Positions 12,085 to 21,000 of a stretch of 64,000 nucleotides of DNA are shown here, one piece after another. The translations under genes and the position numbers were made by a program. This stretch comes from Saccostrea echinata (Eukaryota). The stretch's first letter is position 1. Every line of letters starts with the position of its first letter. The stretch covers positions 930,001 to 994,000 of the forward strand of contig NW_026889772.1 of NCBI RefSeq assembly GCF_033153115.1, read 5' to 3'. A model generated the notes under the pieces. The model saw nothing but the letters and a program-made list of their open reading frames with translations, was not told the DNA's origin and did no database searches.

Positions 12085-15000
12085 GTGAGTAGTTATTTAA
12101 TGCTGTTTTAATCCGGAAATACACTTGATTTAGCGTATGAACTAATAAAAATCAAATGTAGGCTATATTAAGTTTGAACAGTTAGGTGTTTTAAAATACA
12201 ACTGAGTCCATAAGGTTGGGCAGTTATCAAAGTAATTATTTCAAGGAATTTTTGCATTGTAACATTTTATTTATAACATTTCTTTGTGTTGAAGTATTAC
12301 CGTTTCTGCAATAATACAACTTTTTTTTTACATTAAAAAATCGTTGAATACTTAAAAAGGTACAAAATAGATGTATTGAAATAACTATGACATTTAACTT
12401 CTAATAAATTTTAAAAGTGACACAAAATTGAATAGGTTTCATAATCAATTTTTGATTTTAAAATTTTTCATTACACAATACGATAATGTTAAATATAGCT
12501 ACAGGACTTGTCTTTCATGTGTTAAAAAATTATACCTACTGAAATATTTAAAAAAAAGAGGAAAAATAGGAAGATAGGAAAACATTGGTCGCAAACTAAT
12601 TTTTCTTTCCATACCTTTAAGCTTTTTTTTTGTTTGTTTCTTTCTTTCCATTTTTTCTTTTTTTTTCAACTGGAAATGTTTAAAAAAGAAGTAAATATAT
12701 TCTTATGAAATAAAAGATATCATTTAAACTTAAAACCATTAACCTGTATAAATCTCTTGTCTTACTAGCAACCATCCTTAATTTTTAATTATACTCTTTT
12801 ATCTTACTATGTTTGAATCTTTTTGATAATATGGTAGCCTAGAATAAAGTTGTAATGTGTTCTTAACAATGAAAAATATGCATATTTGCGAAGGTTTAAA
12901 AAAGACAACTCAAAGTTTAAAGGGATTTGAAGCTCATATTTTCTAAAACTTTCCAAATAATATCATGACTTATAAGTTGTTAGAACATTTCATACCGAGA
13001 TATATTAAAAGAGTGTTAAAAAAAATTCTTTTATCTTGAAATTATTAAAAACTACGATTTTCGGGACGCGTTTGATTGACACATATCCTTGCTCTTTTAC
13101 AAAATAAATTTAATTCGTAATACTTAAGAAAGGTAGAAATCCTGTTGTGTATCAATGAAAAATATGAAAACTTTAATCTACAAAGTTCACAGTAGAAATA
13201 CTAGAAAGCAAAACCAACCAATTTACCAGTATTTTCAATCCGTGCTCAGTGATGTGTGCAAACTAAACAAATTGAACACACCCGGTTAAACATAAACACT
13301 AACAATAACAGAGCTAGTGCCCAATGTACAAACACATGTGTTTGACGTAATGCTATGAAGAAAGCCGTTGTCATTGAATTCCTATAATATTCATGAAAGT
13401 TCAAATCATTAAACTGAAGTTATTTTTGAATAAAATTAGACATTTAAAATTGTAAACAATGCAGCTGTGTCCAGGCCCCTTTAAAAAAGAAAACCGTTTC
13501 ATAGAAAAAAAAATGATTAAGAACAACATTTTCAAATTGAAAAACTTTATTTGTAGCACAAGCACAGATATCATCAAGCTACAGTGAAAGTACAGGTGGA
13601 TTATACACGGGAAGCAGTGATTACAGTACAGAACAACAAGGATATTACACCTACAGTAGTCAATACTATCACACAACATCGAGTAGCTGTACTTATTACA
13701 CAGACCACTTTGGATCCACTTTCTCTGGAGGATCTTATTCTGTAGGACCATGTACCGATACAACCTGGTACCCAAGCAGTTCCTATCCCTATACCGATAG
13801 CAACGGGTTCACACAATGGACAACCACCAACGGCGTATATACAGATACCAATCATTATCCATACACCTCAAGTAGTAGCTGTACTTATTACACAGACCAC
13901 TTTGGATCCAGTTTCTATGGAGGATCTTATTCTGTAGGACCATGTACCGATACAACCTGGTACCCAAGTAGTTCCTATCCCTATACCGATAGCAACGGGT
14001 TTACACACTGGACAACCACCAACAGCTTTTATACAGATACCAATCATTATCCATACACCTCAAGTAGTAGCTGTACTTATTACACAGACCACTTTGGATC
14101 CAGTTTCTCTGGAGGATCTTATTCTGTAGGACTATGTACCGATACAACCAGGTACCCAAGCAGTTCGTATCCTTATACCGATAGCAACGGGTTCACACAC
14201 TGGACAACCACCAACAGCTTTTATACAGATACCAATCATTATCCATACACCTCAAGTAGTAGCTGTACTTATTACACAGACCACTTTGGATCCAGTTTCT
14301 ATGGAGGATCTTATTCTGTAGGACCATGTACCGATACAACCTGGTACCCAAGCAGTTCGTATCCTTATACCGATAGCAACGGGTTCATACACTGGACAAC
14401 CACCAACAGCTTTTATACAGATACCAATCATTATCCATACACCTCAAGCAGTAGCTGTACGTATTACACAGACCACTTTGGATCCAGTTTCTCTGGAGGA
14501 TCTTATTTTGTAGGACCATGTACCGATACAACCTGGTACCCAAGCAGTTCGTATCCTTATACCGATAGCAACGGGTTCACACACTGGACAACCACCAACA
14601 GCTTTTATACAGATACCAATCATTATCCATACACCTCAAGCAGTAGCTGTACTTATTACACAGACCACTTTGGATCCAGTTTCTCTGGAGGATCTTATTC
14701 TGTAGGACCATGTACCGATACAACCTGGTACCCAAGCAGTTCGTATCCTTATACCGATAGCAACGGGTTCACACACTGGACAACCACCAACAGCTTTTAT
14801 ACAGATACCAATCATTATCCATACACCTCAAGCAGTAGCTGTACTTATTACACAGACCACTTTGGATCCAGTTTCTCTGGAGGATCTTATTCTGTAGGAC
14901 CATGTACCGATACAACCTGGTACCCAAGCAGTTCGTATCCTTATACCGATAACAACGGGTTCACACAATGGACAACCACCAACAGCTTTTATACAGATAC

Positions 15001-18000: not shown

Positions 18001-21000
18001 CAGTTCGTATCCTTATACCGATAGCAACGGGTTCACACACTGGACAACCACCAACAGCTTTTATACAGATACCAATCATTATCCATACACCTCAAGCAGT
18101 AGCTGTACGTATTACACAGACCACTTTGGATCCAGTTTCTCTGGAGGATCTTATTCTGTAGGACCATGTACCGATACAACCTGGTACCCAAGCAGTTCGT
18201 ATCCTTATACCGATAGCAACGGGTTCACACACTGGACAACCACCAACAGCTTTTATACAGATACCAATCATTATCCATACACCTCAAGCAGTAGCTGTAC
18301 TTATTACACAGACCACTTTGGATCCAGTTTCTCTGGAGGATCTTATTCTGTAGGACCATGTACCGATACAACCTGGTACCCAAGCAGTTCGAATCCTTAT
18401 ACCGATAGCAACGGGTTCACACAATGGACAACCACCAATAGCTTTTATACAGACACCGATCATTATCCATACACCTCAAGTAGTAGCTGTACTTATTACA
18501 CAGACCACTTTGGATCCAGTTTCTATGGAGGATCTTATTCTGTAGGACCATGTACCGATACAACCTGGTACCCAAGCAGTTCGTATCCTTATACCGATAG
18601 CAACGGGTTCACACACTGGACAACCACCAACAGCTTTTATACAGATACCAATCATTATCCATACACCTCAAGTAGTAGCTGTACTTATTACACAGACCAC
18701 TTTGGATCCAGTTTCTATGGAGGATCTTATTCTGTAGGACCATGTACCGATACAACCTGGTACCCAAGCAGTTCGTATCCTTATACCGATAGCAACGGGT
18801 TCACACAATGGACAACCACCAACAGCTTTTATACAGATACCAATCATTATCCATACACCTCAAGCAGTAGCTGTACGTATTACACAGACCACTTTGGATC
18901 CAGTTTCTCTGGAGGATCTTATTCTGTAGGACCATGTACCGATACAACCTGGTACCCAAGCAGTTCGTATCCTTATACCGATAGCAACGGGTTCACACAC
19001 TGGACAACCACCAACAGCTTTTATACAGATACCAATCATTATCCATACACCTCAAGCAGTAGCTGTACTTATTACACAGACCACTTTGGATCCAGTTTCT
19101 CTGGAGGATCTTATTCTGTAGGACCATGTACCGATACAACCTGGTACCCAAGCAGTTCGAATCCTTATACCGATAGCAACGGGTTCACACAATGGACAAC
19201 CACCAATAGCTTTTATACAGACACCGATCATTATCCATACACCTCAAGTAGTAGCTGTACTTATTACACAGACCACTTTGGATCCAGTTTCTATGGAGGA
19301 TCTTATTCTGTAGGACCATGTACCGATACAACCTGGTACCCAAGCAGTTCGTATCCTTATACCGATAGCAACGGGTTCACACACTGGACAACCACCAACA
19401 GCTTTTATACAGATACCAATCATTATCCAGATACCTCAAGTGGTTTCTCCAATGTATTGTTTTCCTCACATGCACAGTCATCTACGTATCTTACAACTAT
19501 GGGGTCATTTATATCTTCTTTTTTCGACCAATCATATTTGACCACGTCTTTGTATAAGTCATCCATTTCCTCCTTTAACATTCATTCATCGATGACCTCT
19601 GATTCTAGTTTGAGTCTCATATCTGGGACTTCTTCTCAATATTTCTTGTCTAGTTCTAGCTTTCAATATTTAACGTCAGCAGCTCACTTGTCTTCTTTTT
19701 ACACTTCTAATGTTCATTCACTCGTAGCCACATCTTCTATAGACTTTGTTCAGACATCCATTCAATCATCTTTAAATGTTCAATCAATACTACCCACAAC
19801 ATCTCCACAGTCATCCACAATATCTACTCCCCAGTCAATCTCATCCTTTATCCAATCATCTACAATGTCCTCTGCTATCCAGCCGTACACGACTTCTTCT
19901 ATTATGCAATCATCTACACTGTCATCTGATATCCATTCTTCCATGCCTTCTATTATGCAATCATCTTCAATATCCTCTGCTTTCCATTCATCAACGACTT
20001 TTTCTCTTCAATCGTCCATTATTTCTGCTATCCAATCATCGGTACCCACTTCCATTCAATCAACCATGTCTTCTTCATCTGTTCTATCTGTTGTAACATC
20101 TACGACCCAGTCACCTATCCAGTCAACAAGTTTTCTCCAATCAACGATGTCTTTATCTCCATTCTCAACAGCAACATCAAGCTCTATGATTCCAACATCA
20201 TTTATGCTTTTATCCTCACCGTCCACGGCTCCGACTAGTTCATCACCTTCTTTGATGTCAACCACCACGGCAAATATAGTGGTAAGTACACAGAGTCTTA
20301 CACTTCTGTTTCATATTTCAATATTTTACTAGAAAAAGACCTTTATGATAACCTAACAACCAAGCTTTATGACAATATACCCTTATCACCTGCATATGGG
20401 GTTCATGTCTCTCAGCTGATTCGATAATAAAGAGCATGCTCAACGTACAAACAATTTCTAAAACGAGGCAAGCTATTGACAAACAAGTTGATGAAACAAG
20501 AACATAAACAATCTAGTTGAAAGTCATAATTTCGAATTTTATGGTCGATACAATAATCTTCTCAGCAAATACAATATATTATTAAGTCAAATGGTGACTG
20601 ACGTTATTCATACTAATTGTTAGGCCATTCTTTACACACTGAATTGTCTATGGATTTTTCCGTTTTTCCCGATCATGACAAGGAGCAAGCGGGGAATGTG
20701 ACCGGTCGGCAGGGGATGCTCTCTCCTCTATGGCACCTAATGGACTTTTGAGCTTGAATATTTCACTTGACACCTTACCTATATATTATTTCAAGGTTTT
20801 TATATATCATTTCATACCGGGCAAAACTTTTGAAATACTTACTTTATATGACATTTTACAAAAGTGGAGCTTGATAAGCTAACCCTAGCCCAATCGTCCA
20901 ATAATTATTATCATCATTTTACGAATTAGTACAGAGATATAATACTTCAGTCAATAAAGATGAATTTGATTTTAGAATTGGTTATAAAAAAGCAAAATCT

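What the first reader, a model, noticed from the sequence alone, without database searches (positions are those of the whole stretch)
13557..19447. Hidden 1920-aa domain of 30 near-identical 64-aa Tyr/Ser/Thr repeats, missed by the ORF track
Seen: one frame stays open for 6.7 kb. The consensus unit has 13 Ser, 13 Thr, 9-10 Tyr, 2 Trp, 2 Cys and no Lys, Glu, Ala or Met. It contains recurring (Y/C)TD motifs (YYTDHFG, CTDTT, YPYTDSNG, FYTDTN). It is not a classic Pro-Thr-Ser mucin repeat and I do not recognise it as a named domain. Inference: YTDxxG motifs look like beta-hairpin turns, so each unit may be a small disulfide-pinned beta module stacking into a rod. About 290 Tyr plus His offer DOPA or dityrosine cross-linking and metal binding, as in molluscan adhesive proteins.
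Basis: partly seen in the sequence, partly recalled or inferred. Interest (0 to 1): 0.85.

Follow-up and report, generated by a model that had tools for sequence, protein, structure and literature searches.

The report
Tyrosine-rich repeat exon of oyster surface mucin
The 30 near-identical 64-residue repeats are real, transcribed and spliced, and they form the giant second exon of an oyster gene for a membrane-anchored, mucin-like surface protein whose only detectable relative with this repeat is an uncharacterised gene of the eastern oyster.

Summary
Window 13682-19441 is 30.0 head-to-tail copies of a 192-base unit, about 98% alike, open in one frame only.

It is the body of one giant exon, 13557 to 20281 or 20285. 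A 1472-base GT..AG intron joins it to a signal-peptide exon at 12039-12084. That joint appears in assembled contigs of two public runs from two studies, so the runs hold spliced RNA.

Downstream exons (24757-45033) are intact and 55-90% identical to two Crassostrea proteins. They encode a conserved ectodomain with a VWD domain (NDPH motif), a teneurin-like EGF, two conserved furin-type sites, one transmembrane helix and a conserved short tail.

The layout matches MUC4-type tethered mucins, but no NIDO or AMOP domain was detected. The repeat is atypical for a mucin: 41% Ser+Thr, 15% Tyr, two invariant Cys, about one Lys, pI 4.4.

The first 44 residues of the unit are 80% identical to the 57-residue unit of a Crassostrea virginica protein. 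No Pfam family, solved structure or other protein matches convincingly.

AlphaFold2 gave pLDDT 38-41, so the beta-module idea stays untested. Nothing supports the DOPA-adhesive analogy.

The exon 2/3 splice phase is unresolved.

The parts
12039..12084 (+). Coding part of exon 1. It holds 15 codons (MGPLFVLIFLKFALF) plus one base. With the next exon this gives a signal peptide ending AQA|Q. The transcript reaches at least about 12004.
   Evidence: A scan for ATG, a hydrophobic stretch and a phase-1 GT donor found this one candidate with a consensus donor, TCG|GTGAGT. Contigs of runs X1 and X3 join 12083/4 to 13556/7.
12085..13556 (+). Intron 1: 1472 bases, GT..AG, phase 1. It contains interspersed-repeat fragments.
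   Evidence: The joint 'skips 1472, GT..AG (cut +1)' appears in one contig each of X1 and X3. The acceptor tttatttgtag is visible.
13557..13681 (+). Unique N-terminal part of exon 2, about 41 residues, already rich in Tyr, Ser and Thr.
   Evidence: Translation. Contigs X1 record 7 and X3 record 21 lie on 13556-13683 with 2 differences.
13682..19441 (+). Array of 30 units of 192 bases (64 residues, 1920 residues in all, about 216 kDa, pI 4.4, no N-x-S/T sequon). There are 18 distinct DNA units, with blocks duplicated at lags of 4, 8 and 9 units.
   Evidence: The repeat occurs nowhere else in the 923-Mb genome. 222-base circular repeat contigs appear in all four runs.
19442..20285 (+). Ser/Thr-rich low-complexity tail of exon 2, about 280 residues. 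The exon ends at 20281 (consensus donor GTG|GTAAGT, phase 0) or at 20285 (donor TAA|GTACAC, phase 1).
   Evidence: A local alignment to the Ser-rich part of P0001 gives 108 identities over 306 columns.
24757..31937 (+). Three downstream exon blocks: 24757-25022, about 30865-30950, and 31548-about 31928. They encode the conserved membrane-distal ectodomain that precedes VWD. No confident Pfam family matched. Bounds come from homology and are only partly refined to splice sites.
   Evidence: tblastn of P0001 and P0002 gives 58-80% identity. Pfam gave only weak Ig and CUB hints.
32175..34379 (+). Exon blocks of the VWD domain. The motif NDPH at 32232-32243 sits where many VWD domains carry the autocleaving GDPH.
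   Evidence: tblastn gives 70-90% identity. Pfam VWD scores 47-49 bits in the orthologue proteins. The nearest solved relatives are FCGBP VWD domains, E 8e-21.
39915..43489 (+). Exon blocks of the Cys-rich and teneurin-like EGF region and the membrane-proximal stalk. Furin-type sites are RRKR at 40238-40249 and RRRR at 43340-43351.
   Evidence: EGF_Teneurin matches the orthologues. Basic sites stand at the matching places in P0001 (RRKR, RRRR) and P0002 (RRRR, RKRR).
43822..45033 (+). A mini-exon at 43822-43846, the transmembrane exon at 44160-44262 (helix AAAAAGGAVGVVVVLVIVGVIVYYF) and the last exon at 44910-45033 (a 40-residue cytoplasmic tail with PPRPP, then a TAG stop).
   Evidence: Sequence and translations. 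The tail is 55-57% identical to the Crassostrea proteins.

Best explanation
The array is protein-coding. It forms most of the giant exon 2 of a gene of about 17 exons (12039-45033, + strand) in an oyster genome.

The predicted product is a type I membrane glycoprotein, built in this order:
- a signal peptide;
- a short Tyr-rich N-terminus;
- 30 units of 64 residues;
- a Ser/Thr-rich spacer of about 280 residues;
- a conserved ectodomain with one VWD domain (NDPH motif), a Cys-rich region and a teneurin-like EGF;
- two furin-type sites;
- one transmembrane helix;
- a conserved 40-residue tail.

The array sits where the two neighbouring paralogues carry other Ser/Thr-rich repeat exons, one of them a classical Thr-rich one, and where MUC4 carries its tandem repeats. 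I therefore read it as the long, acidic, probably O-glycosylated and protease-resistant extracellular stalk of a tethered, mucin-like epithelial surface protein. Cleavage at the conserved basic sites, and perhaps at Asp-Pro, could release it.

Shown here:
- the repeat, its frame and the intron 1 splice;
- the transcript's presence in RNA-type runs;
- the conserved scaffold exons;
- the conservation of the 44-residue two-Cys core of the unit across oyster genera.

Inferred only:
- glycosylation;
- an intra-unit disulfide between Cys3 and Cys24;
- shedding;
- the barrier or adhesion role.
For: Repeat and frame.

Splicing and transcription: the GT..AG joint 12084|13557 appears in contigs of two runs from two studies. 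Most intron bins are empty, and the collapsed 222-base repeat contig appears in all four runs.

Relatives: the only relatives in 5.8 billion proteins are two models of one C. virginica gene, P0001 (896 bits) and P0008 (822 bits), both with the same repeat.

Conservation of the unit: the core is 35/44 identical between the two species, while the rest of the unit differs. Both Cys are kept in 30/30 and 15/15 units.

Scaffold: P0001 carries VWD, EGF, a transmembrane helix and a tail behind the repeats. Thirteen matching exon blocks follow in the window at 57-90% identity. They have no internal stops once the homology matches are trimmed to their splice sites.

Paralogues: two tandem paralogues have the same scaffold. 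One carries an unrelated repeat exon and the other a classical Thr-rich exon in the same slot.

Variants inside the array: 9 synonymous against 15 non-synonymous sites, with most differences at third codon positions.
Against: - The exon 2/3 junction does not close with the best sites. The consensus donor at 20281 is phase 0, while the only good acceptor (24756|24757) needs phase 1. Joining those two gives an immediate TAA. The full-length reading needs the weaker donor 20285|GTACAC or a one-base assembly error.
- No read evidence was obtained for that junction, for the tissue, or for the protein.
- The composition is not that of a classical mucin (Pro 6%, Tyr 15%), so heavy O-glycosylation is assumed, not shown.
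- The C. angulata orthologue model P0002 shows no such repeat. That model starts inside the Ser-rich part and may be truncated.
- The exhaustive phmmer search did not return even P0001, so its blank says little about other species.
Confidence: 0.6

Rival explanations
1. It is a released structural or adhesive matrix protein. After convertase cleavage the Tyr-rich array leaves the cell. Tyrosinase or peroxidase then cross-links it (DOPA-quinone, dityrosine) into periostracum, shell matrix, ligament or cement. His and Asp bind metal or calcium.
For: The array is 15% Tyr and 4% His and acidic, at pI 4.4. Conserved furin-type sites lie upstream of the membrane helix and would allow release. One C. 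gigas study places a gene with the same automatic name as P0002, 'serine-rich adhesin for platelets', in a mantle biomineralisation module. That name is generic and gene identity was not established.
Against: There is almost no Lys, and no basic character or short decapeptide repeats as in mussel foot proteins. The conserved cytoplasmic tail and transmembrane exon argue for a role at the cell surface. No literature or proteome hit was found for this protein.
Confidence: 0.2
2. Each 44-residue two-Cys core is a small folded binding module, for example for chitin, another polysaccharide, or microbes. Its Tyr and Trp would stack on sugar rings. The array would then be a multivalent lectin-like or receptor surface, not a passive stalk.
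For: The core is 80% identical across genera, as conserved as the folded VWD exons, while the rest of the unit has diverged. Cys, Trp and the four (Y/C)TD motifs are invariant. AlphaFold2 places beta strands at the same positions in each unit.
Against: pLDDT is 38-41, so there is no usable model. No carbohydrate-binding or other family matched. Concerted evolution alone explains the uniformity within a species.
Confidence: 0.12
3. The product is truncated or unproductive in this genome. The consensus donor at 20281 is used, the junction creates a TAA, and the gene yields only a secreted signal-peptide-plus-repeat protein, a decayed transcript, or is on its way to becoming a pseudogene.
For: Donor GTG|GTAAGT at 20281 is a perfect consensus. 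Joined to acceptor 24757 it reads GTG TAA.
Against: All downstream exon blocks are intact and conserved at 55-90%. The paralogue's equivalent intron is phase 1. An in-phase GT donor lies 4 bases further on, and a GTAC-type donor is inferred elsewhere in this gene.
Confidence: 0.08

Closest known systems
Crassostrea virginica uncharacterised protein (P0001, labelled 'threonine-rich GPI-anchored glycoprotein PJ4664.02-like'; second model P0008, LOC144625695)
   Same: It has the same architecture from end to end: a signal peptide, then units with the same two-Cys core (35/44 identical), a Ser-rich spacer, VWD, EGF, a transmembrane helix and a tail. The scaffold exons are 57-90% identical. It is most likely the orthologue.
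   Different: It has 15 units of 57 or 63 residues, against 30 units of 64 here. The last 13-20 residues of the unit are unrelated. Its Ser-rich spacer is twice as long. It has no experimental characterisation, and its database name is automatic.
MUC4-type membrane-tethered mucin (own knowledge; context in PMC5354666 and PMC8660890, seen only as title and abstract)
   Same: A signal-peptide exon is followed by one giant exon of tandem repeats. Many small exons then encode a VWD domain with an Asp-Pro-His motif, EGF, one transmembrane helix and a short tail.
   Different: No NIDO or AMOP domain was detected in the orthologues. The unit is 64 residues with Cys, Trp and 15% Tyr, not a 16-residue Pro/Thr/Ser unit. 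The motif is NDPH, not GDPH. Furin-type sites are present.
FCGBP and gel-forming mucin VWD assemblies (PDB 8rde, 8r0t; PMC10880436)
   Same: These are the best solved relatives of the VWD domain, at E 8e-21. The Asp-Pro-His motif lies at the start of the domain.
   Different: There is a single VWD with no detected C8 or TIL, and the protein is membrane-anchored. Gly of GDPH is replaced by Asn. The paper tested the Asp and His mutants, not Gly.
Mussel foot proteins and other DOPA adhesives
   Same: They are Tyr-rich tandem repeats in a bivalve.
   Different: Here the protein is acidic and has almost no Lys. The unit is long and contains Cys. A conserved transmembrane scaffold is attached. No modification data exist.
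Bacterial Cys-rich 'YY-D-DGDG-YG' repeat protein P0006
   Same: A 64-67-residue period aligns in register over three units, with (T)(Y/W)Y-D..G...G and a Cys 20 residues on. The whole-library E-value is 3e-4.
   Different: The similarity is only about 16 bits per unit, counted three times. The acidic DxDGDG loop and three of its four Cys are absent here, and the first Cys here is absent there. No Pfam family links them. I treat it as chance or convergence.

Membership tests
Oyster two-Cys Tyr/Thr/Asp repeat protein (orthologue group of C. virginica P0001/P0008) | Tandem units that start SSCTYYTD and carry a second Cys 21 residues on, followed by the SSSYPYTDSNG motif | tested here: met
   The core is 35/44 identical between the species consensuses. 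Both Cys are present in 30/30 and 15/15 units.
Oyster two-Cys Tyr/Thr/Asp repeat protein (orthologue group of C. virginica P0001/P0008) | The same VWD-EGF-transmembrane scaffold downstream in the same gene | tested here: met
   Thirteen exon blocks at 24757-45033 are 57-90% identical to P0001. The exon 2/3 phase remains unresolved.
MUC4-type membrane-tethered mucin | A signal-peptide exon followed by one giant exon of tandem repeats | tested here: met
   Exon 1 is 12039-12084. Exon 2 is 13557-20281/5 with 30 units.
MUC4-type membrane-tethered mucin | A Pro/Thr/Ser-rich repeat that is densely O-glycosylated | tested here: inconclusive
   Ser+Thr make up 41% of the array, but Pro is only 6% and Tyr 15%. 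Glycosylation cannot be seen with these tools.
MUC4-type membrane-tethered mucin | NIDO and AMOP domains ahead of the VWD | tested here: not met
   Pfam scans of P0001 and P0002 list neither. The window's exon blocks ahead of VWD gave only weak Ig and CUB hints.
MUC4-type membrane-tethered mucin | VWD domain, EGF domain(s), one transmembrane helix and a short cytoplasmic tail | tested here: met
   VWD scores 47-49 bits and EGF_Teneurin 23-29 bits in the orthologues. The transmembrane exon is 44160-44262 and the tail exon 44910-45033.
MUC4-type membrane-tethered mucin | GDPH autocleavage motif | tested here: inconclusive
   The motif here is NDPH, at 32232-32243. Asp and His are required for cleavage (PMC10880436). 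The effect of Gly to Asn was not tested there.
Mussel-foot-protein-type DOPA adhesive | A basic, Lys- and Tyr-rich short repeat, secreted without a membrane anchor | tested here: not met
   The exon 2 product has one Lys in 2241 residues and a pI of 4.4. A transmembrane scaffold is attached.
Mussel-foot-protein-type DOPA adhesive | Tyr converted to DOPA | not testable with these tools
   This needs mass spectrometry.
Rhs/teneurin YD repeat, or bacterial MopE-like metal-binding motif | A match to the family profile | tested here: not met
   Neither family appears in Pfam scans of 239 or 640 repeat residues, even at E up to 10. The P0006 similarity is about 16 bits per unit.
Pfam PF22647 (EF_0837-like_N) | A domain-length match above the curated cut-off | tested here: not met
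   The 32.9 bits over 10 units come from a 12-residue piece (profile positions 21-32 of 48) summed over the units. No single stretch passes.

The most novel reading that the evidence does not exclude
The conserved 44-residue two-Cys, Tyr/Trp/Asp-rich core may be an autonomous, so far undescribed small beta module. It would be disulfide-closed and carry four (Y/C)TD turns. Oysters would then use it 15-30 times in a row as a multivalent binding or cross-linkable surface, for chitin, carbonate, metal or microbes, mounted on a cleavable VWD-EGF membrane anchor. A pair of splice donors four bases apart (20281 and 20285) might switch between a short secreted form and the tethered form.
Probability: 0.15. 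Interest if true: 0.6.

Novelty: new variant of a known kind. Interest (0 to 1): 0.4.

Why it matters
The finding gives a checked gene model, with signal peptide, a spliced 6.7-kb repeat exon and a membrane anchor, for a large oyster surface glycoprotein. No product of this gene appeared among the database hits.

The mucin slot of a conserved VWD-EGF scaffold can hold quite different repeat cassettes in neighbouring paralogues. One of these cassettes has a Cys-bearing, Tyr-rich core that stays 80% identical across oyster genera. That level of conservation suggests the core does more than act as a spacer.

This makes it a reasonable target for oyster mucosal biology, shell and adhesion proteomics, and studies of how repeat arrays evolve in concert. 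It does not overturn anything known, and its function is still inferred.

Tried and rejected
Searches that gave no usable relative or model:
- Pfam on repeat pieces gave only a summed 12-residue artefact, PF22647.
- The PDB sequence search of three units gave nothing below E 1.
- The exhaustive phmmer search of three units against 1.84 billion representatives gave two weak hits. One is the bacterial Cys-rich repeat P0006, rejected after pairwise inspection. The other is a 154-residue protein, P0007. The search did not return the known relative P0001, so its blank is weak.
- The ESM Atlas scored 0.82 at best with low recognition, which gives no lead.
- AlphaFold2 on four units alone, and on three units with a six-row alignment, gave pLDDT 38 and 41. 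I therefore ran no fold search, since it would be meaningless.
- Rfam on 10000-25500 gave nothing.
- Literature searches for the automatic protein names, for PF26129, and for Tyr-rich oyster repeat proteins gave nothing specific.

Readings ruled out:
- A satellite or transposon origin is rejected. The unit occurs only at this locus, in both DNA and protein searches of the whole genome.
- An extra Ser/Thr-rich exon between 20282 and 24756 was sought and not found.

Steps not done:
I could not read the C. virginica or C. angulata loci, or test whether C. angulata has the array upstream of its truncated model.
Exons were searched one by one by reference, and the full-length Crassostrea proteins served as the proxy for domain calls.
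- The N runs at 8313-8463 and 37619-37799 were left as they are.

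
Full report
**1. Observation**

Tandem Repeats Finder reports one array at 13682-19440 with period 192, 30.0 copies, 98% matches and no indels. A stop-to-stop scan finds one open frame of 2263 codons at 13541-20329 on the + strand. Cutting it every 64 codons from 13682 gives 30 units in perfect register.

The consensus unit is identical to window:15410-15601:+. It has 13 Ser, 13 Thr, 10 Tyr, 5 Gly, 4 Asp, 4 Phe, 4 Pro, 3 His, 3 Asn, 2 Cys, 2 Trp and 1 Val.

The other five frames of the unit all contain stops. 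One unit being open could be chance, about 4%. The 280-codon non-repeated tail in the same frame could not, at 0 of 20000 simulations.

The ORF list misses the array for a simple reason. The array has no in-frame ATG, GTG or TTG, so the listed ORF begins only at the first TTG, at 19457.

The array is about 43% G+C against 30-35% around it. Both DNA and protein searches of the 923-Mb genome find the unit only at this locus. It is therefore not a satellite or a mobile element.

**2. Gene model**

I scanned upstream for an ATG, a hydrophobic stretch and a phase-1 GT donor. One candidate had a consensus donor: 12039-12084, MGPLFVLIFLKFALF plus one base, TCG|GTGAGT. Joined to exon 2 this gives a signal peptide ending AQA|Q.

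I then laid the contigs of four public runs on 10000-13950.
- One contig in X1 and one in X3, from two studies, join 12083/4 to 13556/7 and skip 1472 bases with GT..AG ends.
- Most intron bins are empty.
- All four runs hold a 222-base contig that closes on itself after 192 bases, which is the collapsed repeat.

The runs are only guessed to be RNA by their records. The spliced joint is what shows it.

**3. Relatives**

The whole exon was searched against 5.8 billion proteins and found one protein. This is P0001 from Crassostrea virginica, 2447 residues, 896 bits, with an automatic name and no characterisation. A shorter query found only P0008, a second model of the same gene.

P0001 has the following parts:
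- a signal peptide;
- 15 units of 57 or 63 residues;
- a long Ser-rich repeat region;
- a conserved ectodomain with VWD (47 bits) and a teneurin-like EGF;
- a transmembrane helix;
- a short tail.

The first 44 residues of the unit are 35/44 identical between the two species. The remaining 13-20 residues are unrelated. Both Cys are kept in 30/30 and 15/15 units. Concerted evolution explains uniformity within a species. Conservation between genera at the level of the folded scaffold points to constraint on the core.

**4. The rest of the gene**

tblastn of P0001 and of the C. angulata protein P0002 against the window finds 13 exon blocks between 24756 and 45027, at 55-90% identity. Their frames are intact once the matches are trimmed to plausible splice sites. 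They include:
- the VWD start with NDPH at 32232-32243;
- furin-type RRKR at 40238-40249 and RRRR at 43340-43351, with basic sites at the matching places in both Crassostrea proteins;
- the transmembrane exon at 44160-44262;
- a tail exon at 44910-45033 with a PPRPP motif.

The best solved relatives of the VWD are FCGBP domains. In those domains Asp and His of GDPH are needed for autocleavage (PMC10880436). The Gly to Asn change seen here was not tested in that paper.

Exons were searched singly by reference, and the Crassostrea proteins served as the proxy for domain calls.

**5. An open problem in the model**

The perfect donor GTG|GTAAGT ends exon 2 at 20281, in phase 0. The only good acceptor of exon 3 (ttttcag|, exon start 24757) needs one base from the exon before it. 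The equivalent intron of the paralogue is phase 1. Joining 20281 to 24757 reads GTG TAA.

An in-phase GT donor lies four bases on, at 20285|GTACAC. A GTAC-type donor is also inferred at another intron of this gene. No extra Ser/Thr-rich exon lies between the two exons.

Three readings remain:
- the weaker donor is used;
- a G is missing from the assembly;
- part of the transcripts end in a stop.

**6. Family context**

The conserved exon 31548-31937 has two close paralogues on the same contig, 26 and 96 kb downstream, at 55% and 49% identity. There are about 13 distant ones elsewhere.

The first paralogue lies in the window. It has its own 1205-codon exon at 53586-57200 with an unrelated acidic repeat, and its intron phases match. 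The second has a 337-codon classical Thr-rich exon.

Exon 2 is therefore the mucin slot of a shared scaffold. Another earlier report names the genome as the rock oyster Saccostrea echinata. I did not verify that. The window is, however, about equally distant from both Crassostrea proteins.

**7. What the repeat is not**

- Pfam, PDB sequences and the ESM Atlas give nothing usable.
- The PF22647 score comes from a 12-residue piece summed over ten units.
- The exhaustive phmmer search gave a bacterial Cys-rich repeat protein, P0006, at E 3e-4. The alignment runs in register over three units, but it is worth only about 16 bits per unit and does not share the Cys pattern or the acidic loop.
- That same search missed P0001, so its blank is weak.
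- AlphaFold2 gave mean pLDDT 38 for four units alone and 41 for three units with six rows. Both models are all-beta with periodic strands, but far below any usable confidence. I ran no fold search.

**8. Reading**

The exon product is 2241 residues, about 250 kDa, with pI 4.4. It has one Lys, one Arg, two Glu, no N-glycan sequon, 42% Ser+Thr and 13% Tyr.

Together with the scaffold, this fits best a tethered, mucin-like surface glycoprotein. Its stalk would be a non-classical repeat bearing Cys and Tyr, releasable at the conserved basic sites.

Three rivals remain open and testable:
- cross-linked matrix or adhesive;
- multivalent binding module;
- truncated product.

The analogy with basic, Lys-rich DOPA glues is not supported by the composition or the architecture.

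**9. Verdict**

This is a new variant of a known kind: a giant tandem-repeat exon in a VWD-EGF membrane mucin-like gene. It shares its repeat with one annotated but uncharacterised orthologue. Interest is moderate.

Noticed in passing
window 53586-63934 (runs off the window end): A tandem paralogue with the same VWD-EGF scaffold (40-60% identical exon blocks). Its giant exon of 1205 codons carries an unrelated acidic, Asn/Thr-rich repeat. Its giant-exon donor is phase 1 (CAAG|GTATAT).
   Followed up: partly
G000:C23:1055220-1057659 (L021): A third tandem paralogue. Its slot exon is a 337-codon classical Thr-rich mucin stretch (128 Thr). About 13 more distant family members lie on contigs C54, C51, C29 and C1.
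   Followed up: partly
window 20276-20290 and 24750-24760: Two GT donors lie four bases apart at the end of exon 2. The consensus one is out of phase with exon 3 and would create a TAA at the junction. The weaker one is in phase.
   Followed up: partly
window 11150-11400: An interspersed repeat of about 245 bases, with at least 6800 candidate copies in the genome at about 91% identity. It has very high summed depth in the RNA-type contigs of all four runs. No Rfam family matches it.
   Followed up: partly
window 13036-13484 (inside intron 1): Many contigs 90-95% alike stop at fixed points (13260, 13386, 13484) and run on into unlike sequence. This is the pattern of another dispersed repeat, not of this gene's transcript.
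   Followed up: no
window 40238-40249 and 43340-43351; 32232-32243: Two basic furin-type sites at matching places in three oyster species, and an NDPH motif at the VWD start. Together they predict a precursor cut into several pieces.
   Followed up: partly
window 13682-19441: Blocks of units recur inside the array. Units 5-8 resemble units 13-16, units 24-25 equal units 28-29, and five units are identical. This indicates recent multi-unit duplications.
   Followed up: partly
window 8313-8463 and 37619-37799: Runs of N. The second lies in the intron between the exon blocks ending at 34379 and starting at 39915.
   Followed up: no
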